DNA from: Salpingoeca rosetta
Taxonomy: Eukaryota > Protista > Choanoflagellata
Length of the DNA stretch: 64,000 bases
Assembly: GCA_033442325.1 (NCBI GenBank)
Contig: JAWQFM010000020.1
Span: 1,125,446 to 1,189,445, forward strand
Reading direction: 5' to 3'
The translations under genes and the position numbers were made by a program. This document shows, in pieces, positions 13,795 through 46,185 of the stretch. The notes under the pieces are model-generated. The model made no database searches. It worked only from the letters and a program-made list of their open reading frames with translations, and was not told where the DNA came from. The stretch's first letter is position 1. Every line of letters begins with the position of its first letter.

Positions 13795-16336
13795 TGCAAC
13801 GCATACAACGCGAACACACCGTGGCACAACACTGTCTCGCGCTTGCCCTTGTGGTTATGTAGGCGGCACTGGATTTGCATCGCAGGCTGTTGTTCAAGTT
13901 TGAGATTGAAGCACACTTGGTGCCCACACTGAAATTTCCTGTAAGTGACGATTGACGATTGTGTGCCTGTCCCTGTACCGCCCGAAACGTGGCTGAGCCA
14001 CATGCACGACCACCACTCCTCCACCACACTGCTCATGCTCGCTGCACGCTGCCATCCACGAATGGAACGTGCATGTTACACCGCCGCTGCTGCTGTGAAC
14101 AGCGAGCTGCACTGCAGGTGTTTCGCAACCCGCGCGCGTGGCACCCGGACATGGCGCCCACCCTGGAGCTGCGCAACCTCAATGCCGCTGTCACGCTTGT
14201 GGCGCTCACCCAGCACCTGCAGGACATGGGTGTCAACGGCAGCGTGATACCCCACACCCACCTGGCAAGCGCCAGGATCATGTTTCAGTCGCTGTCAGAG
14301 GCGCTTGCGGCCCACGCCCTCATGCGCCGATTCCCACACATCATCTGGCCCCAGCAGGACTGCGACGTCACGTTTGGCCAGGTACGCGCGTGCTCGCCAT
14401 GACATGCCTCTGTTCAAGGCTGTAGCAACCCAACCGCAGCGCCGACCTGCATAGCATTTCGTCTCTGGTTTTGTTTGGAGCAACACAAAGGCAAGGGGGA
14501 AAATTACGCCATCCTTTTCTCGAAACAAGGCCTCGCATGCGTGCACGTTTCTCTCACACACTTCCTCATATATCGACACGATCACACTCTCCGCCACGTG
14601 CACACCCACCCACCCACAACTCCACCCATACACACACACACACACACACAATGACACACACACACAATGACACACCCACAACCCCCACCCATACACACCC
14701 ACAATGACATACACACACACACACACACACAATGACACACAATGACACACCCACAACCCCCACCCATACACACCCACAATGACATACACACACACACACA
14801 CAACCTGTGTTGTCTCGTGTTGTTGCATCAGCCCAAGGAGACGCAGTGGCTGTGGTTTCATGGTTGTGGGCGTGTGCGTGCATCATCGCAAGAGCTGCGC
14901 TCGTGGCTGTCGCAGTATGGCATGGTTACCCACCTTGGCACCTTGAAACATCAAGACGGCTTCTTTGCCGCATTTGGAACGGTGAAACAAGCCACAGTTG
15001 TGAAGGCACAGGTTCAGGGCATGTCGTGCTCGCACCCGGTGCAAAGCGATTCCTTGCAGGTGACGTACGTGCAGGACCACACCGTCTTTGACATGGCAGG
15101 CACCCAGTATCGTGACGCCGCGGACGTGAAAGGCGTGCCGTTTGGACCCTGGAATGAAATGGGCAACGAGCAGCGCAATGAGCACGGCCTGCGTGCACAC
15201 GGCGCTCACGCTCGCCGCCACTCGTCTTTGGAGCCGAGAGACGCGGCCGTATCTGCCCCCCATGTTCCACCACCAAGAGCAGCACGCCCCCGCCGCTCGT
15301 CGCCTGTATCCCGCTCATCGCTCGAGAGGGACACCATCAAACCCCGATTTCCTTCCCCGGCTGGGTCGTCGTCTTCATCGTCAGCAGCGGTAGCGCCGTA
15401 TACGCGTGGTGCATCGCTGCCTCCGTCCTCTCGGCGACACCCCACACCTCCCAGGCCGGGCACATGGGTTGACCGGCGTGGCGACAGGGGGTTTTCCCAC
15501 CGCAGGCGCGATTCAGACCGGGGCGATAGGCGGCCCCGCGACCGCGTGCATGATCGCCTCCGCTCGCCAGACAGCCGTGACGCCCCTCCCCCCCTTGGTC
15601 GGCCGCGGTCCCGCTCATCCCAGGACGCGAGTGCAGCGGCAGCGCAGCGAAGACACAGTCCAACGGCTCGGGATGACGGCCGACGCCACTCTACGCCTTC
15701 GTCATCGGCATCTGCAGATGCAGCAGTGGTGAAGCGGCGCTCTCCAACAGCGCAGCTTGCTGAGAAGGGCGGGGCACCTCAAAGCACCCGCCAGTCGCCC
15801 CCTGCCTGGAGGACAGCAACTGGTGGCCCCGGAAGCAGCAGCTTTGGGAATCGTACCGCTGCTGCTGCTGCTGCTGCGGCTGCTGTGGCACGCGCGTCCC
15901 GGTCCACTTCAGCGTCACCGAGGACCGTGGCGGGCAGCGACGCAGATGCCGCTTTCAAGAATGCTCTCAAGGACGTTCGAGGCCGTGTGGAGCAGCTGAA
16001 GCAGGGCAAGACACAGCAGACGCAGCAGCAACAACTTGCCCACACCGGGGAACAAGGCAAGTACTCGGCTGTGTTGCAGCGGTTGATAGAGTCGTCGAAG
16101 ATCACGTCACCACCTCCCTCGTCGCCATCGCCAGCCATAGGGAAGGAAGCAAGCACCTCACCTACCCCAGGTGGGAAGCCGTCAACAGCAGCATCGTCAT
16201 TTGCACCACCTGCACCTGCGCCCACAAGGGAAACAACAAGCAACGCAAAACGCCAACATGTGAAGGACGAGTTTCGAACAGAGATGGCAGAGCAAGGCCA
16301 GAATAAGGGCGGAAAGCGCCAGCCTGCGTCTGGCAA

Positions 16337-16399
<63 letters not shown>

Positions 16400-18146
16400 T
16401 AGGAAGGACAAGGACGCCGCTGGCGTGTATGTGACACGCAAGTGGACGCAACATCGATGGGAGGACTCAGGGGACGAACCCCAGAAGGGCGTGTCTGCTG
16501 CCCTTGCTGCTGGCGCTGATGCATCCTCAGCAACACGGGCAGAGATAGCTGACGCAAACCAACCGAGACCCACCACGACCACGATAACCGCGACTCCAAC
16601 TGTTACACCACCCACAACGGCAACGACAACAACGGCAACGACGACAACAGCTACCGCAACCGCTACACAAGGGGCGTCCACAACACCCGCAGCCATGACA
16701 GCCACCGCAGCCCCATCCACCCCGTCTCCTTCAACACCGTCAACTGCAGAAACGGATACAGCGACGCCCGGAGAGGCAGCACCGCAAGCTAGCAGCACGT
16801 CGATGTCGGCGTTCACGACAACCAACGGAAACGGAAGCGTCTCGACGACGTATGCCATGCCAGGACAGTCTGAGACCACAGAGTCGCCTGTGCTCATCTC
16901 AGCGTACGCAAACCTATACCCAACAGCGCCTGCTGTACCCTTGTCCAGTGTTACCAGCATGTGGGGACAGCAGCAACAGCAGCAGCAGCAGCAGCAGCAG
17001 TATGCTATGCAGGCGGAATATGATGCGTATTGGGGCCATTACTATTCACAGTCCGGGTATGGCGCTTACTACGATCCATCATCCTACGCCTATGGATGGT
17101 ACGGTCAACTACCTGGAACGGAGCAGCAAGAGCAGCAGCAGCCACAACAAGCACAACAAGCACAACAACAGCCACAACCGCAAGTGCCACAAGAACAGCA
17201 GCAGGCATCTCAACAGCAGCAACACGCACAACAGCAGCAGCCAGCAGTGAGTGCGTCCAGTGGGGCGAATCAAGGTGATACCGTGTCCGCATCGGATGCA
17301 CCTTCGCAATTAACAACGCTGGACAAGATTGTCGTCGCCGCAGCCATGGATCTTCACGGCTATTCGGAGAACAACCAGCCCGCTGCCAATGCATCGAAGG
17401 ACGAGCGCGCCACCGCAACGCCAACCTCCACGCCAGCAGGGTCTGGCACCGCTTCAGCAACACAAACAGCGGCAGCATCTGCACCAGGTGCCAAGGAAAG
17501 GGATGCAGCCGCAAGCATTTCGGCAGCGGCCACGACCGCGACGTCGTCTTCAAACCCCGAGAGCGCTGCGGTGTCCGTTGCCAACACGTTGCAGGGCGCA
17601 ACAAGCCATGTGTCGTTGGCTGTGGCATGGGCGGGCGCACTTCAGCTGAAGAAGTGGCACTTTGGGGTTGAGCTGCGGGCGGTATCTGGCGGGCGCGACG
17701 TGCTGTCGCGTTGCTTGCCGGAGGAGCACACGGTGCTGCGCGTGACCAAGCGAGCGGCGTTGACAGAGGCAACGCAGGCTGCATTGCTGGCGCTGGTGAG
17801 CAAGAGTCGTGCCGGTGGCGACAACAACAGCAGCGTCAGCAGCATCAGCGGTGAGGCTGGGCCTTCTGCACGCGCACGAGCTGATGCCGCCGGCATGACG
17901 TTGCATGCGGCGGCTGTGCTGACGTGCCGCGCCCGGGACCCGTTGCATCGCGCCGCGTTTGTGGCGTGTGTTGGCTTGTACCTGAGCAAGAAGAACGCTG
18001 TTGCATGCGTGACCACCCCTGCAAGCACCCTGTACATTCTGCCCCCGTGCTCGTTTGCGCAGCAATGCGTGGACAAAGCAGCGCCGTTGCTTGACAGTGC
18101 AGGAGTGCAGGACACAGACCTCGTCGTCATTGTGCAAGGGCAATGA
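10937..18146 (+). CDS. SPEN/RBM15-family protein: several N-terminal RRMs, long low-complexity middle, C-terminal SPOC domain. 5' part spans an N-gap; alternative start near 12526
   Basis: Putative first exon MRNKVFVAAIPMQSDRAAVARIFE then GTGAGT (RNP2-like). RRM-like segments at ~12540-12790, 13080-13940, 14118-14381 and 14832-15070 (DVTFGQ|PKETQWLWFHG resembles the SPEN RRM3-4 junction). SPOC: AWAGALQLKK..VSGGRDVLSRCLP..LRVTKR..YLSKKNAVACV..LYILPPCSFA..DLVVIVQGQ*. Confidence 0.8.
11170..11688. other. Assembly gap (others: 1903-2002, 19536-19657, 26734-26833, 28645-28743, 44670-44769, 58969-59068), all flanked by microsatellites
   Basis: Runs of N. Confidence 0.98.
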
Positions 18147-36441: not shown

Positions 36442-39326
<2,885 letters not shown>

Positions 39327-39820: not shown

Positions 39821-40912
39821 CTACACCTCGTGCTCCTCCTCCAGTGTGTATGCGGCAAACGCCGGATTTGTCGCCTGCATCTGCAGCTGTGCGCGCCGTC
39901 GCCTCCGCGCAACCGTCGTCGCAGCGGCAGCAGCGCCGGATACAGACATGTCCGTCTCCCGGCGGTCGCGCGCGTATGTGTGCAGCCGCGGCCGCAATCT
40001 CGCCGTCTCGGCCTCCAGCTGGCCACGTGCAGACTCGATTTTGTCCAGCAGTTCGCGTGTTGTTGTCTCCATGCGCATCATCTCTGGGGACCACTGCCGC
40101 CGCTCCACCTGCGACCGCTCCTCCGCTGCCCACATCAGATCTCCAATCCACTCACCGAGCACCCGCACCAGGTCCATGCGGCCCCGCGCGTGCCGTTTCC
40201 CGTCCTCCCCCGCGTCCTCAATCGTCCCGCCAGCAACAGACACCCACCCGTCGCGCGTTGTCGACAGCTTCCCCACTGCCGGCGCCACGGGGGTGTCCTG
40301 TCCAAACGCGTGCAGCAGCGCGCTTGCTCCGCGTTCGCTTGCGCGCCAGTACCGCTGCAGGTTGAGGCCTTCCTCTTCCTCGCCCTCGTCCTCCCTGCCC
40401 GCGCCCCACGCCCGCGTCTCAAGGAACTCCACGCAGCTGCGCATGTGCTCCTCCGTGATGCCGGCCGGGTCCGCCGGCAGAAACAGCCCGTGGAACTGGA
40501 AGATGCTCGCCAGGGTGTCGCGCGCGCGCACGCCGGACGCAATGTGATTGCCGTCAGGGTACAGCTCCAGGTTGAAGTCGCAGAACCGCTTGATCGCGCT
40601 GTCGCCCTCTGGCACGGCGGTGGTCGTGTTGTTTGCACTTACCGCACTCAACCCACCCTTCTTGGTGACACCGTTGCCAGTCTCCTTTCTGGAGGAGCCA
40701 TTCTTCGCTGTGCCTTGGCAGCTGCTGCCTCTGGCATCGCCGCCACTCGCGACCACGTCTTCAACAGCATTGGCGTCGTGTCGCTGTAGGCGTGCACGGC
40801 GGTGCTCGCAACCAGATGATGACACCGAGGAAGGCGCTTCCGATGATGGCGATGGTGACGATGATGTTGGTGATGGAGAGGCCGATGCCTTGGCTCCAGG
40901 GCCATCATGGCG

Positions 40913-40958
<46 letters not shown>

Positions 40959-41795
40959 GCATCGTCGGCGCTGTCGTCGCTGTCGTCACTGCTCTGACTG
41001 TTCTCATCCTCGCTGTCATCGCTGACGATGGTGGTCGTGGTGGCGGTAGTTGGTGTTCGCCCCAGCACTGGTTTGCCCAGCACCCTCACATCGCTCTCTC
41101 CACCCTCGAGTGTCTTCGTCTCCATGATGCCAGTGCCGGTGTCGTCACAGGGCACATCACCTCCCCCGCTGGAGACGAGCAGCGGCAGGACTGCAATGCG
41201 CCGCGACCGCTGCTGCTGCAGTGCCAGCTCCATCTCCGTCAGGAAGTTGTCGGGCGTGTGCTTGAATGTCCCCTCCCGCACCTCTGCCAGGGATTCGTGC
41301 GACAGCAGCGGGAGGTACGCGCAGGAGCGCATGAGCCCTTTCCTGAACCGCTGCCGCCAGTCGTCGCCCTCGCGAATGTCCTGTCGGTCCAGGAAGCACA
41401 CGACGCGGTGGCCCGTGGTGAGGAACAGCCGCTGCAGCCGCGAGCACAGCTCCTGCGCCAGCTCGTCGTGCACATCGCGCCGGTAGCTGATGAAGAAGTG
41501 GAACGTCTTTCGCTTTGCGTAGCGCTTGCGGTACACGTGGTACAGCCAGGCGAGGGCACCCACGAGCAGCAGCACGAGCAGCACCACCAGCACCGCCGCC
41601 GTCTGGCCGGGGGTGAGGGTCCTGCTTGCCGAGTCAGCGCTTGAGCGCGTGGTGCACGCCAGGCGGCCCGTGGAGAGGCGGTGCAACACAGGGTACGGGG
41701 AGACCGGGTCACACGACAGGCAGTCTGTGGCGTTGCACGTGAGGCAGTTGCTGCCAGCCGGGCACTGATCGCATCGCCCTCCAGTTGTCAGCACA

Positions 41796-41887
<92 letters not shown>

Positions 41888-44602
41888 CAAGGAGACGGCG
41901 CGGGATCCACGGGGACACACGCGCAGGCAGGAGGAGCGGTTGACAGAGACGAATAGACCAGCCTCACACCGCGAACACATGTCCGCACTCACATCGCACG
42001 AGATGCAGTGCTGCGCTGCGCAGCTGCGGCATACCCCGCCAATGCCAGACGGGCCGGCGGAGGCGTGGAAGCCGAGCGGGCACGCGGGCACGCAGCGGCC
42101 ATCGAGCAGAAGGAAGCCGTTCTGGCACACGCGGCACTCGTCGTCGACGCGGCACACGCGGCAGTTGGGCTCCAGACACGGCCGGCACACGCGCGAGATG
42201 GTGGCGTTGGTGCTGGCGATGGTGGCGGTCGTCGCGTTGGTGGCGGTGCTGGCAGGTGCAGATGTTGTCAGCAGTGCGGCCGCCGTTGCAGCTGTCGTTG
42301 TTGTTGTGGTGGTTGTGGTTGTTGTGGTGGTTGTTGTGGTGGTTGTGGTTGTCGTGCTTGCGATGGACATGGATACGTCAAGCACATCTGGGACGCGACC
42401 GTCGGTGGCGTCGCACACGGACCGGTCGACGCAGCGCCCGCTGAGCAGATATGCCGCTGCTGCATCCGGGGAGCAGCGCGTGCACACGTCGCTCTCGCAC
42501 TCGATACAGTTCACCTCCGTGCACGGGCGACACACTCCGCCACGAACGCCAATCGTGCGCGTCCCGAGCGCGTGTGTCCCTGGCGGGCATGTGTGTATGC
42601 ATGCGTCGTTGTGGAGGAAGAGGCCTGGTTCGCACGCCTCGCACGTGCTGGCACTGGTGCAGCTCTCGCAGCCGTCGCTGGCACACGGCGTGCACACGAG
42701 GCCGCCCGCAGCCGTTGCAGCGAACGTGCGGGCCGGGCAGCGGGCGACACACGCGCCATTGTGGAGGACAGACCCTGATGCACAGGCGGTGCAGATGCTG
42801 GCGGACACGGGGCAGGCGAGGCAGGCGGAGTCGATGCAGGGCTGGCAGGTGCCGTTGGTGGCAGAGTAGCCCGCAGGACACGCAGCGACACACGCGCCCT
42901 CATGGAGATAGAGGCCGGGGAAGCACTTGCGACAGTCCAAGCCGTCACTGGCAGCGTCGCACGCCTCGCATCCGGAGCTGGCACAACCTGCATCGACATG
43001 ACACGCACGAATGATAACATTGGTGTGCACACGTGAAAAGAGAGAGAGAGGGGGGGGGAGGAGTGTGATTGTGTGTGTTGGGGGGGGGAGGAGTTGTGAG
43101 GATTACAGAACGCCAATCAATGGAGGTGAAGGGGTGTCTTCTGGGAGGAGGGGGTGGGAATGGGAAGGGCACGCACGCACTTAAGCACACGCACACAATC
43201 ACACACGCACACAATTACACACGCATACACACGACACACACGCACACAATCACACACGCACACACGCGTACACACACACACACAACACACGCATACACGT
43301 AAACACACGTACACACGCATACACACACAACACACGCATACACACACAACACACGCATACACATACACACATACACACGTGAGCGAACCTCTGCAGAACG
43401 CCTGTCCGACGGTGATTGGAAACGGGGTGCTGGCCAGCTCAACGTCAACCCCGGCGAAGCGGCCGCGGAAGAGAACATTGCACGCCACGGCATCGCCCGT
43501 GTCCGCATATGTTCCTGGCGGGCAGTTGGGCAGCACAAAGTCCAGCAGCTGCGTCTGCAGGCCCTGCAAGCCGAGCTCTGCCTGGTCAAACACGTCCACG
43601 GTCTGTGCAAACTGCTGGATGAGCTGGGAGACGTTGAGACCAAGTTGGAGGCTGAGGCGCAGGATGGCCCCGCCCTCCAGCCGCTCCTGGGCCGGCGCCC
43701 ACCCGGTCAGGTCGTTGCACGACGGATAGCACGCGCGCGGTGACACACACGCGCGGTGCGAGGGGTCGTAGATGCTGGCGCCGAGGAGGGAGGTTGGGCA
43801 GGTGGGAAAGGCGGCAATGTTGTCGCGAAGTGCTGCCAGCGTCGCCTGCTGGTCCTGTGTCAAGCACGTGCAGTCGCCCACATCAACAGCAGCGAGCGGC
43901 AGCAGCACCGTCGTCCCTGTGCCCGTGGAGGCCGTCGTGGTGGCCGTCGTGGTGGCCGTCGTGGTGGCCGCGGTGGTTGGCTGCGCTGCCGTTGTGGAGG
44001 ACGTGGCATTACCAGCGCCGCCAGTGCCGGCGTGCCTGGCTGCAATGGTGGCCGTGAGCTCAGCTGTTGCGTTGCACATGATGGCGACATCCGATGCAAA
44101 CCGCGTGTCATGTGCCGCCCACGCGTGCGCGCAGCAGTCATCAACGGTGAACACGGGTCGCGCCTCGTAGGGGAGAGCAGACAGCAGCGGGGACGTGCAC
44201 GCGGTCGTGGCGTTGGCGGCAGCACTGGTGCAGTTGATGATGGTGTGCGGGAGGTGCACGATGTTGCGCCGCACAGGCAGGGCAGTGAAGGCCGTGTGGG
44301 GCAGGGAGGTGAGGGCGGTGTCCGTGAGGTTGATGGTGCGCAGCAGGCTGCTCTGCGCCAGCGCCGCAAACGGTGAGCCTGAACAGTAAACACAAACACG
44401 TGCACATGACAACGTGAACGCGTGCGTGTGTGCATGGCGTGTGGAGTGGTTGGTGAGAGGAGAGAGGACGGGAAAAAGGAGGACGGTTGAGGGGGGGGGG
44501 GAATGGAAGAAATGGGAGAAGAGGGAGGAGAGGGAGATGGGAAGAGCAAGAGGGGCAGAGGTTTACATCACACACACACACATGCCCACACACACACACA
44601 TG

Positions 44603-44669
<67 letters not shown>

Positions 44670-44769
44670 NNNNNNNNNNNNNNNNNNNNNNNNNNNNNNN
44701 NNNNNNNNNNNNNNNNNNNNNNNNNNNNNNNNNNNNNNNNNNNNNNNNNNNNNNNNNNNNNNNNNNNNN

Positions 44770-44854
<85 letters not shown>

Positions 44855-46185
44855 CGCACACACACACCGTCGAGCAAGGAGAGCGGGTTGCTGTTGAGCC
44901 TGAGGTCCTGCATGCGCGGTGCTGGGGTGATGGCGCCGCTGCGAAGAGCGGTGATGATGTTGTTCGACACATCCAGCATCTGCAGCTCCTGTACAAAGAC
45001 AAGCGCCTTGGCGGCGATGGCGGTGATGAGGTTGCGGCCCAGGTCGAGGGAGACCAGGTGCGGCAAGCGGCGCATCCATGATGCGCTCAGAACAGGCAAG
45101 CGGTTGCTGGCGAGGTTGAGCACGCGGAGGGAGGGCAGGTTGAGGGTGTCTGGCCGGATGTAGGCGATGAGGTTGAAGCTGAGGTCGAGCGTGTGCAGCT
45201 TCGGCAGGTAGAGCGGCAGGTCCTGGTTGAGGGCCGGGATGAGGTTGAAGCTGAGATCCAGCACCTCCAGCGACGTGAACCGAGCAAGGTGCTCTACGGG
45301 GATGAAGGACAGCCCCGTTCGCCACAGGTCGAGGTGGCGCGTGGTGACCGGCAGCACCTCCAGGTGCGCCAGCAGGACCTCGATGGATGGGATGTTTCTG
45401 CAGCTCACGTACCCGTTCTCCAGGCACGAGCACAGGCCGCAGTCGTCCATGAGCTCGGGAGCAAACGGCCTGCAGCGCTGTGGACACTCTGTCAACGCCG
45501 TCCGCGTTGTCAGCGGCGTCACGGTACTGCCGATGTTGCTGTCTGTGTTTGTGCTTGTGGATGTCGTGGCGGTGGTTGTCGTCGTTGTTGCTGTTGTTGT
45601 CGTGCTGGTGGTGGAGGTTGTGGCGTTCACGCTGCCATCGCCTGTGGTGGAGGTGGCGTTACCGCCGGCGCCGGCGAGCGTCTCGTAGCAGTGGGTGCAG
45701 TGCCTGCACCGCGCATCTTCGGCACAGTAGAGGTGGTCCGGGCAGTCCTGGTGGCCCGCGCACGGCAGGAGCGTGTAGCACGCCTCGCCGCACTGCAGGG
45801 CAAGGTCGAACGCCGCCACCTCTGGCAGGCTGGTGAGGTGCTCGTTGGCGCAGTCTGTGATGCACGGTTGGTGGCACACGACGCTCTCGTCGGCCTGGAG
45901 CGCCAGCACGCATTCCACAGCGCGCAGGCAGTCGCCGCCGCTCGAGCCTGTGGATGAGCAGATGCTGGTGAAGTTGCACTGGGCGCGGCACGGGTCGTCG
46001 GGGTCGCCCACACGCGCATGCACGCCACCGCCGCCGCCACTCAGCAGCAGCACCGCTACCATGGCCACTAAGGACAGGGACACGGCAACGAGTGGCGCGC
46101 GTCTGTGCACGGTGCTTCTCGACACGGCAGTGGCTGTCGCAGCAGCCACGCCATGCACACTCCACCTCCTCAGCATCTTCATCAT
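39821..46185 (-). CDS. Toll-like-architecture receptor: signal peptide, Cys-rich modules, ~8 LRRs, furin-like (CxxC) repeats, single TM, SARM1-like TIR, coiled coil. Exons 46185-44868, 44378-43389, 42987-39821 (1824 aa)
   Basis: Both introns are phase 1 with GT..AG ends (GACG|gt..cag|GCTCA and AGAG|gt..cag|GTTGT). Exon lengths 1318+990+3167=5475 nt, divisible by 3. LRRs such as SLEVLDLSFNLIPAL; TM AAVLVVLLVLLLVGALAWLY; TIR FFISYRR..FLDRQDIREGDDW..DNFLTEMELAL. Confidence 0.85.

What the first reader, a model, noticed from the sequence alone, without database searches (positions are those of the whole stretch)
40420..41510. The receptor's TIR looks like an enzymatic SARM1-type NADase with the catalytic Glu intact
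Seen: TFHFFISYRR..LAQELCSRLQ..CFLDRQDIREGDDW..YLPLLSHESL..DNFLTEMELAL..AVLPLL, and later TLASIFQFHGLFLP..MRSCVEFLE. Established: human SARM1 TIR reads DVFISYRR..VFIDVEKLEAG..LVLSPGAL..DWVHKEIVTAL..IVPII..QAVLTFNGIKW..IIRFLQ, with E642 catalytic for NAD+ cleavage, whereas animal TLR TIRs act as non-enzymatic scaffolds. The equivalent Glu codon here is 41234-41236. Inference: ligand-induced clustering of this surface receptor may directly switch on NAD+ hydrolysis or cyclic ADPR-type signal production, i.e. a receptor-NADase that needs no MyD88.
Basis: partly seen in the sequence, partly recalled or inferred. Interest (0 to 1): 0.85.

Follow-up and report, generated by a model that had tools for sequence, protein, structure and literature searches.

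The report
SARM1-like TIR in choanoflagellate receptor
The cytoplasmic tail of this protist surface receptor carries a genuine TIR domain that most resembles the NAD-cleaving TIR of SARM1 and keeps the catalytic glutamate, so it is probably an enzyme-type signalling module; a 2026 preprint has already shown such activity for a related TIR, so this is a new member of a known kind.

Summary
On the minus strand, ORF 43030..39821 encodes furin-like repeats, one TM helix and a TIR_2 domain (E 2e-11). Codon 41234-41236 is GAG, which is Glu599.

A profile of 79 homologous TIRs hits human SARM1 TIR best among all solved structures (E 3e-11). It aligns Glu599 with SARM1 E642. No TLR, IL-1R or MyD88 chain matches at E≤1. 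The AlphaFold model superposes on the whole SARM1 TIR (Z 16.4, 2.0 Å, 137/137 residues). The Glu is kept in 78/79 family members.

The family is the juxtamembrane module of many choanoflagellate receptors with LRR, kelch/ephrin-like or TNFR-like ectodomains.

The TIR is split by a roughly 160-190-residue low-complexity stretch. This is either a coding insert or an in-frame 483-nt intron (41089..40607). No read evidence was obtained. The TIR stays intact either way.

Enzymatic activity is inferred, not shown. A 2026 preprint reports Glu-dependent cADPR synthesis by a related S. rosetta TIR (F2UB80) and by human TLR4.

It is not a SARM1 orthologue. Verdict: new member of a known kind, of moderate interest.

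The same window was also noted by the scan for the receptor architecture (s1-431376).

The parts
39821..43030 (-). Last, large exon/ORF (1069 codons plus stop). It encodes furin-like Cys-rich repeats with poly-Thr and poly-Ser runs, a TM helix, the split TIR and a C-terminal tail. The true acceptor probably lies a few codons inside the ORF, because it has no ATG start.
41540..41599 (-). Transmembrane helix (aa 478-497). It is followed by a basic stretch HVYRKRYAKRK, which puts the TIR in the cytoplasm, about 12 residues from the membrane.
   Evidence: sequence; 42 of the 79 homologues with more than 70 aa upstream of the TIR have a TM-like segment directly before it
41171..41506 (-). TIR N-half (aa 509-620): betaA FFISYRR, BB-loop LDRQDIREG, the SxxxL loop, alphaC DNFLTEMELAL, and betaD AVLPLLV.
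   Evidence: Pfam TIR_2 E 2.1e-11; pLDDT about 97; aligned to SARM1 563-651
41234..41236 (-). GAG codon for Glu599, the putative catalytic glutamate on helix alphaC.
   Evidence: conserved in 78/79; in the column aligned to SARM1 E642; same DNxLxE position as E1118 of F2UB80 and E231 of A0A418B8H0, as designated in the preprint
40595..41158 (-). Low-complexity stretch between betaD and the C-half (aa 625-812). It contains a Thr run, an acidic Ser/Asp run, Q14 and a Ser/Pro run. It is predicted disordered except for one helix.
40607..41089 (-). Candidate in-frame intron or exitron of 483 nt (codons 648-808; GTGAGG...CCAGAG). Unresolved.
   Evidence: For: the splice-like ends, a drop in GC3, and a spliced product that is collinear with the S. 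infusionum orthologue P0002. Against: it is open in frame, which happens in only 3.5% of shuffles, and its base composition is exon-like (T 12%, versus 32-39% in the gene's two real introns).
40337..40594 (-). TIR C-half (aa 813-898): FCDFNLELYP, betaE/alphaE TLASIFQFHGLFLP...MRSCVEFLETRAW.
   Evidence: phmmer hits to 18 homologues; pLDDT 83-98; the VIA alignment runs to model residue 372, matching SARM1 residue 700
39824..40336 (-). C-terminal tail (aa 899-1068). It has no Pfam family and is weakly conserved with the tail of P0002 (26% identity).
44866..46185 (-). Presumed exon 1: start Met, signal/anchor-like hydrophobic stretch, a Thr-rich run and LRRs.
   Evidence: LRR_8 E 5e-27; collinear with P0002 residues 110-424
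43378..44376 (-). Presumed exon 2: last LRRs plus a Cys-containing ectodomain segment.
   Evidence: collinear with P0002 residues 575-754; no Pfam hit

Best explanation
The gene encodes a type I surface receptor: signal peptide, LRRs, furin-like Cys-rich repeats, one TM helix and a cytoplasmic TIR. It belongs to a choanoflagellate, probably Salpingoeca rosetta or a close relative. Its TIR belongs to a protist family that is the juxtamembrane module of many choanoflagellate receptors. Among characterised TIRs, this family is nearest to the NAD+-cleaving SARM1 TIR. Shown here: the fold, the SARM1-like sequence signature (FISYRR, the BB-loop Asp and Gly, the SxxxL loop, and D-x-x-x-x-E on alphaC), and near-invariance of Glu599. 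Inferred: ligand-driven clustering of the ectodomains brings the TIRs together, so that the BB-loop of one completes the active site of the next, as in SARM1, AbTir and plant TIRs. NAD+ is then cleaved at Glu599 to cADPR and/or ADPR. These products act as second messengers, for example on the ADPR-gated TRPM2 channel that S. rosetta is known to possess. No MyD88 or IRAK is needed. The low-complexity stretch sits in the loop after betaD. If translated, it may be a phospho-regulated spacer that modulates TIR-TIR packing.
For: TIR_2 E 2.1e-11. The family profile hits SARM1 TIR at E 2.6e-11 and pairs DnvLlE with DWVHKE(642). C. elegans TIR-1 scores 4e-9 and plant TIRs 3e-7 or weaker. No TLR, IL-1R or MyD88 chain matches at E<=1. 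In the AF2 model both TIR halves have pLDDT above 90. VIA-align gives SARM1 TIR Z 16.4, rmsd 2.0 Å and 137/137 residues aligned, above plant TIRs (about 15), SPARTA (14.7), IL-18Rbeta (14.2), MAL (13.5) and AbTir (13.3). The top Foldseek hits are all enzymatic TIRs. Conservation in the 79-sequence alignment: E599 78/79, D594 79/79, Y516 and R517 79/79, D548 77/79, G555 75/79. Homologues are receptor-like: LRR/furin, kelch+ephrin-like or TNFR ectodomains, then a TM helix, then TIR_2. The S. infusionum protein P0002 is collinear with all three exons. Literature: the S. rosetta TIR F2UB80 (motif HTDTCDNVLLEW, E1118) and G. theta L1IYH1 make cADPR in E. coli, and the preprint states that in all cases of its Fig. 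3B a point mutation of the catalytic glutamate abolished cADPR production (10.64898/2026.04.20.719644). Choanoflagellates lack MyD88 and IRAK (PMC6040629). S. rosetta TRPM2 is ADPR-gated (PMC6461439).
Against: No enzymatic data exist for this protein or its close orthologues. The Trp preceding the Glu in SARM1 (W638), and as I recall in many bacterial and plant TIRs, is Asn here. However, the active F2UB80 also has Asn. The position of SARM1 H685 is Ala here and Pro in the family. In the preprint's screen only 4 of 29 protist TIRs carrying the Glu were active. A member of this very family, A. invadans A0A418B8H0 (P0097), scored inactive. That construct ended just after betaD, and P0097 aligns poorly in the C-half. 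F2UB80 is only about 30% identical to this TIR by my by-eye alignment, which was not computed. A 160-190-residue insert next to the surface used for TIR-TIR assembly could hinder oligomerisation. Residue-level superposition of Glu599 on E642 rests on the HMM alignment plus matching ranges, not on coordinates.
Confidence: 0.55

Rival explanations
1. Scaffold-type signalling. The receptor TIR does not cleave NAD+ physiologically. On clustering it recruits other TIR proteins of the same organism through TIR-TIR contacts, for example the Ras-PH-kinase-TIR protein or SARM1.
For: The S. rosetta TKL kinase P0151 carries a TIR_2 of this same broad family: 32% identity to the P0002 TIR at E 1e-5, with a Ras+PH+kinase+TIR_2 architecture. 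Richter et al. proposed Kinase-TIRs as choanoflagellate adaptors. Many Glu-bearing TIRs were inactive in the preprint's screen. The genome holds many other TIR proteins.
Against: The near-invariance of the Glu and of the preceding Asp across 79 divergent family members is more than a pure scaffold would be expected to need. The closest characterised relatives are enzymes. The two modes are not exclusive, as TLR4 may show.
Confidence: 0.28
2. NAD+-depleting suicide effector. Clustering triggers massive NAD+ loss and cell death, as with SARM1 or abortive infection, rather than production of a messenger.
For: SARM1 is the best structural and sequence match. Some protist TIRs, such as that of G. 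theta, depleted NAD+ in E. coli.
Against: Most cADPR-producing eukaryotic TIRs in the preprint did not deplete NAD+. The row for the related S. rosetta TIR F2UB80 records Active and cADPR only, with nothing entered under NAD+ depletion. A surface receptor family with dozens of ectodomain types fits signalling better than suicide.
Confidence: 0.1
3. Degenerate or inactive TIR. The low-complexity insertion has disrupted the domain, and the gene is drifting.
For: No homologue has the insert. GC3 drops to 0.66 within it.
Against: The 1069-codon ORF is intact. Both TIR halves keep all family-invariant residues and GC3 of about 0.9. The model folds both halves into one confident TIR. The intronless S. 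rosetta paralogue PTSG_06613 also carries a low-complexity (poly-Gly) spacer of about 47 residues at the same loop. The stretch may simply be spliced out.
Confidence: 0.05

Closest known systems
Human SARM1 TIR domain (NAD+ hydrolase; e.g. PDB 6O0Q, 9MW2) and C. elegans TIR-1
   Same: Best match among solved structures by profile (E 2.6e-11) and by fold (Z 16.4, 2.0 Å over the whole 137-residue domain). Shared features are FISYRR on betaA, the BB-loop Asp and Gly, the S-x-x-a-L loop after betaC, D-x-x-x-x-E on alphaC with the Glu aligned to E642, and a similar betaE/alphaE.
   Different: Only 22% identity. There are no ARM or SAM domains and no octamer scaffold; instead the protein has an LRR/furin-like ectodomain and a TM helix. 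Asn replaces W638 and Ala replaces H685. The betaD-betaE loop is about 15 residues longer in the family, and this protein adds a further 160-190 residue stretch.
S. rosetta F2UB80 and G. theta L1IYH1 TIRs, shown to make cADPR in E. coli (preprint 10.64898/2026.04.20.719644)
   Same: Same extended TIR of about 220 residues. Same motif logic: FISYR, F.D...L..G, PxxS..a(i/l), HT..(C)DNxLxE(W/M/Y), R(R)IxPLxxG. The Glu designated catalytic is at the same DNxLxE position. F2UB80 comes from a choanoflagellate.
   Different: Only a distant paralogue, with roughly 30% identity by eye (not computed). It falls in a different 40%-identity cluster from the hits found here. The architecture of F2UB80 is not known to me. 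This protein itself has not been tested.
Choanoflagellate 'TLRs' (signal peptide-LRR-TM-TIR) of Richter et al. 2018 (PMC6040629)
   Same: Same architecture. The nearest relatives are such proteins from H. balthica, S. infusionum and S. urceolata, and S. rosetta PTSG_06613.
   Different: That paper classified them by domain order only and did not discuss the catalytic Glu in the receptor TIRs. It noted the Glu only for SARM1 homologues.
Animal Toll-like receptors (TIR Pfam PF01582, clade 1 of the TIR atlas in PMC13142454)
   Same: An LRR ectodomain, a single TM helix and a cytoplasmic TIR. The human TLR4 TIR is also reported to make cADPR through an alphaC Glu.
   Different: The TIR here matches TIR_2 only. 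No TLR, IL-1R or MyD88 chain reaches E<=1 with the family profile. The BB-loop reads REG, not the RDxxPG box 2. There is no MyD88 partner in the lineage.

Membership tests
TIR domain superfamily (Pfam clan STIR; TIR_2 PF13676) | Significant match to a TIR profile above the curated threshold | tested here: met
   TIR_2 E 2.1e-11, 44.8 bits against a cut-off of 28; all 79 aligned homologues hit TIR_2
TIR domain superfamily (Pfam clan STIR; TIR_2 PF13676) | Flavodoxin-like alpha/beta fold with betaA-betaE and alphaA-alphaE | tested here: met
   The AF2 model has pLDDT above 90 in both halves. It superposes on complete TIR domains, for example SARM1 at Z 16.4 with 137/137 residues aligned.
Catalytic (NAD+-cleaving) TIRs | Glutamate on helix alphaC at the position of SARM1 E642 | tested here: met
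   The column holding Glu599 is aligned by HMMER to E642 with high posterior probability. It lies in model helix 96-109. Side-chain orientation was not checked because no coordinates were available.
Catalytic (NAD+-cleaving) TIRs | BB-loop with the conserved Asp and Gly needed for the composite active site (SARM1 D594, G601; residue roles are from my own knowledge of the SARM1 literature) | tested here: met
   D548 (77/79) and G555 (75/79) align to D594 and G601
Catalytic (NAD+-cleaving) TIRs | Aromatic residue four positions before the Glu (SARM1 W638; also, as I recall, AbTir W204 and the plant WxxxE motif) | tested here: not met
   Asn595 occupies this position, and Asn is found there in 70/79 family members. 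The feature is not universal: the active F2UB80 has Asn and L1IYH1 has His.
Catalytic (NAD+-cleaving) TIRs | Measured NAD+ cleavage or cADPR-isomer production that depends on the Glu | not testable with these tools
   Available only for distant relatives, in a preprint
SARM1 orthologues | ARM - SAM - SAM - TIR architecture | tested here: not met
   Pfam finds Furin-like_2, TIR_2 and upstream LRR_8 only, with a TM helix before the TIR
Animal-type TLR (clade 1 TIR, PF01582) | TIR of the TLR/IL-1R/MyD88 type with box 2 RDxxPG | tested here: not met
   No PF01582 hit at E<=1. No TLR, IL-1R or MyD88 chain at E<=1 with the profile. The BB-loop reads LDRQDIREG.
Choanoflagellate TLR-like receptors (Richter 2018 definition) | Signal peptide, LRRs, TM helix and intracellular TIR, in that order, in one protein | tested here: inconclusive
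   All elements lie on one strand in the right order and are collinear with the transcript-derived P0002.

The most novel reading that the evidence does not exclude
This TIR family is the common enzymatic output module of a whole superfamily of choanoflagellate surface receptors with LRR, kelch/ephrin-like or TNFR-like ectodomains. It would be a 'receptor NADase' system analogous to receptor kinases, converting ligand-induced clustering directly into ADPR/cADPR and then Ca2+ entry through ADPR-gated TRPM2. That would imply that the LRR-TM-TIR receptors of the animal/choanoflagellate ancestor signalled enzymatically, and that scaffold signalling through MyD88 is a later animal invention. It would also mean that choanoflagellate 'TLRs' carry a SARM1-like rather than a TLR-like TIR, so the shared architecture may be convergent.
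Probability: 0.3. Interest if true: 0.7.

Novelty: new member of a known kind. Interest (0 to 1): 0.42.

Why it matters
[quoted passage not shown] That bears on how Toll-like signalling began, and on whether choanoflagellate 'TLRs' are true homologues of animal TLRs. The idea is testable, because S. rosetta can be genome-edited and has an ADPR-gated TRPM2. The general point is already in a 2026 preprint: catalytic TIRs are widespread in eukaryotes, including a choanoflagellate TIR and human TLR4. This locus therefore adds an example and an architectural context rather than a new principle.

Tried and rejected
- A single-sequence phmmer search of the TIR N-half against PDB found no TIR at all. 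Only the family profile did.
- The search for homologous proteins was used three times and gave almost nothing. The cytoplasmic region was swamped by low-complexity words. The TIR-only region gave 0 hits. The P0002 TIR gave only itself and the S. rosetta kinase-TIR P0151. So I could not recover an annotated protein for this gene or fetch F2UB80.
There is therefore no read evidence for expression or splicing.
- The two sequencing-run searches show the insert present in many runs of 'organism A'. None of these is on record as RNA, so they do not settle the intron question.
- The look-up of encoding contigs found nothing for P0002 or for the window ORF 14742-18143.
- The search of earlier findings by sequence was blank.
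- The organism was not verified. It is consistent with the choanoflagellate top hits and with 100-N scaffold gaps.
- SARM1 orthology was considered and rejected on architecture.
- An animal TLR-type TIR was considered and rejected on profile evidence.
- I did not compute the alignment with F2UB80, because that would have required typing a long sequence. The comparison is by eye.
- No phylogeny against reference TIR clades was built, because reference sequences could not be fetched.

Full report
**1. What is there**

The window is eukaryotic. It has TG/CA-microsatellite introns and 100-N scaffold gaps.

On the minus strand, ORF 43030..39821 (1069 codons) encodes the following, in order:
- several furin-like Cys-rich repeats (Pfam Furin-like_2, E 4.6e-17), with poly-Thr and poly-Ser runs;
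- a hydrophobic helix (aa 478-497), followed by a basic stretch;
- a TIR_2 domain (aa 512-620, E 2.1e-11, 44.8 bits against a cut-off of 28).

Codon 41234-41236 is GAG, which is Glu599 in DNFLTEMELAL.

Two ORF pieces upstream on the same strand look like earlier exons. Piece 46185..44866 starts with Met, has a hydrophobic leader and has LRRs (LRR_8, E 5e-27). Piece 44376..43378 is the other.

The S. infusionum protein P0002 is a complete ORF predicted from a transcriptome assembly. It has LRR, furin-like, TM and TIR_2 domains. It aligns collinearly with exon 1, exon 2 and exon 3. So this is very probably one gene for an LRR / Cys-rich / TM / TIR receptor. Splicing itself was not verified.

**2. 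The TIR is split**

An exhaustive HMMER search with the N-half found 449 relatives at E<=1e-3. The best are 49-51% identical.

In 18 of the returned homologues, aa ~808-898 of this protein match a segment that follows the N-half within about 5-50 residues. In the 79-sequence alignment A1, residues 625-812 have essentially no counterpart.

AlphaFold2 with A1 folds both halves with high confidence into one domain (pLDDT about 97 for the N-half and 83-98 for the C-half). It leaves the middle disordered.

Is the middle coding sequence or an intron?

For an intron:
- codons 648-808 (41089..40607, 483 nt) begin GTGAGG and end CCAGAG;
- removal keeps the frame;
- the joined product (…LEGGESD|GDSAIKRF…) is collinear without a gap with P0002 (…IEGEADGHPTLKKF…);
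- GC3 falls from about 0.9 to 0.66.

For a coding insert:
- the stretch has no in-frame stop, while the other two forward frames have 3 and 5 stops;
- only 3.5% of dinucleotide shuffles are open in frame;
- its base composition is exon-like, with T at 12%, against 32-39% in the gene's two real introns;
- the intronless S. rosetta paralogue PTSG_06613 has a low-complexity poly-Gly spacer of about 47 residues at the same loop.

I rate a coding insert at about 65% and an intron at about 35%. In either case the TIR is intact.

Read evidence could not be obtained. 

**3. What kind of TIR**

A single-sequence search against PDB sequences found no TIR. The profile of A1 gave these results:

| Match | E-value |
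|---|---|
| Human SARM1 TIR (all top 14 rows) | 2.6e-11 |
| C. elegans TIR-1 | 4e-9 |
| Plant AT1G72930 | 3e-7 |
| Cat1, L6, Roq1, TIR-STING, bacterial TIRs | weaker |
| MAL/TIRAP | 0.8 |
| Any TLR, IL-1R or MyD88 chain | none at E<=1 |

The printed alignment pairs the family's eDnvLlEyelAl with SARM1 KDWVHKEIVTAL, so Glu599 pairs with E642. Other pairs are:
- FISYR(R) with F565-R570;
- D548 with D594;
- G555 with G601;
- S577 with S622.

Foldseek's best hits are AbTir with 3AD bound, TIR-1, RPP1 and SARM1.

VIA-align, with the disordered stretch trimmed, puts SARM1 TIR first: Z 16.4, rmsd 2.0 Å, 137 of 137 residues, model 10-372 matched to SARM1 561-700. It is followed by TIR-1 (15.5), plant TIRs (about 15), SPARTA (14.7), IL-18Rbeta (14.2), MAL (13.5), Hydra TRR-2 (13.4) and AbTir (13.3). 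The margin over other TIRs is modest, because all share the fold. Sequence and structure nevertheless agree on SARM1 as the nearest.

Conservation in A1:

| Residue | Conserved in |
|---|---|
| Glu599 | 78/79 |
| Asp594 | 79/79 |
| Tyr516 and Arg517 | 79/79 |
| Asp548 | 77/79 |
| Gly555 | 75/79 |

Differences from SARM1: Asn replaces W638, and Asn is the family consensus there. Ala (Pro in the family) sits at the H685 position. The betaD-betaE loop is longer.

**4. Who has this family**

Named top hits come from choanoflagellates: Hartaetosiga balthica, Salpingoeca infusionum, S. urceolata, Stephanoeca diplocostata, Diaphanoeca grandis and S. rosetta PTSG_06613. Further out are Rhodelphis, the oomycete Aphanomyces and a chytrid.

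Their architectures all end in a TM helix followed by TIR_2. The ectodomains are LRR(+furin-like), kelch propeller + ephrin-receptor-like, or TNFR-Cys.

Of the 79 hits with more than 70 residues upstream of the TIR, 42 have a TM-like segment directly before the TIR. So this is a juxtamembrane receptor module.

A cytosolic Ras-PH-kinase-TIR protein of S. rosetta (P0151) carries a related TIR.

**5. Literature**

Richter et al. 2018 (PMC6040629) described choanoflagellate LRR-TM-TIR 'TLRs', found no MyD88 or IRAK, and noted the catalytic Glu only for SARM1 homologues.

The preprint 10.64898/2026.04.20.719644 (Hurieva et al., April 2026) reports several relevant points:
- most non-TLR eukaryotic TIRs keep the Glu;
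- human TLR4 TIR makes cADPR in E. coli in an E750-dependent way;
- the S. rosetta TIR F2UB80 (residues 1034-1255, E1118, motif HTDTCDNVLLEW) and the G. theta TIR L1IYH1 make cADPR, and the paper says that in all cases of its Fig. 3B a point mutation of the catalytic glutamate abolished production.

Counting in the ordered construct places E1118 on the Glu of DNVLLE, the same position as Glu599. The preprint's residue 231 of A. invadans A0A418B8H0 is identical to my hit P0097, and it is likewise the Glu of DNLLLE.

That Aphanomyces TIR belongs to the present family and scored inactive. However, the construct stopped right after betaD, and P0097 aligns poorly in the C-half.

Only 4 of 29 protist TIRs with the Glu were active in that assay. 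The Glu alone is therefore a weak predictor.

A second preprint (PMC13142454) places SARM1 in a bacterial-derived clade 8 together with a few choanoflagellate sequences. It also stresses several uncharacterised eukaryote-only clades. I could not determine which clade this family belongs to.

S. rosetta TRPM2 is an ADPR-gated channel (PMC6461439). It is a plausible downstream sensor, but this link is my inference only.

**6. Mechanism and odds**

Most likely (about 0.55): clustering of receptor ectodomains assembles the TIRs, Glu599 cleaves NAD+, and cADPR/ADPR act as messengers.

Rivals:
- pure scaffold recruiting Kinase-TIR or SARM1 (about 0.28; not mutually exclusive with the main model);
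- an NAD+-depleting death switch (about 0.10);
- a degenerate domain (about 0.05).

**7. Verdict**

Given the 2026 preprint, this is a new member of a known kind.

The residual novelty is twofold. First, choanoflagellate TLR-like and other surface receptors share this SARM1-like, Glu-bearing TIR. Second, there is an unusual low-complexity interruption in this copy.

Noticed in passing
window 40607-41089 (minus strand): A 483-nt stretch inside the TIR. It is both an open in-frame low-complexity coding run (Thr run, acidic Ser/Asp run, Q14, Ser/Pro run) and bounded by GTGAGG...CCAGAG. It is a possible exitron or retained intron. Removing it gives a product collinear with the S. infusionum orthologue.
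   Followed up: partly
window 44670-44769 and 43310-43365: A 100-N assembly gap lies inside intron 1 of this gene, flanked by TG repeats. It may be why no protein containing this TIR turned up in the protein collections.
   Followed up: no
window 37776-39100 (plus strand): Pieces of a WD40 protein resembling Rae1/Bub3 (…[12 protein letters not shown]…, …[11 protein letters not shown]…). They are split by introns made largely of TG/CA microsatellites.
   Followed up: no
window 39824-40336 (minus strand): The C-terminal tail after the TIR (aa 899-1068) has no Pfam family. It shares scattered conserved positions with the tail of the S. infusionum orthologue (W-I-x-D, RRQ-S, IE-ARG, RL-PRL-T; 26% identity), which suggests a conserved but undescribed cytoplasmic element.
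   Followed up: partly
L001 1001-4600 (S. rosetta GL832972.1, PTSG_06613): An intronless S. rosetta paralogue with nine LRR_8 units, a TM helix and the same TIR family. It has a poly-Gly spacer at the loop where the window's gene has its long insert. So S. rosetta already has an annotated LRR-TM-TIR protein.
   Followed up: partly
window 14742-18146 (plus strand): A 1134-codon ATG-started ORF. It is not found by exact look-up in the gene collection and was not examined further.
   Followed up: no
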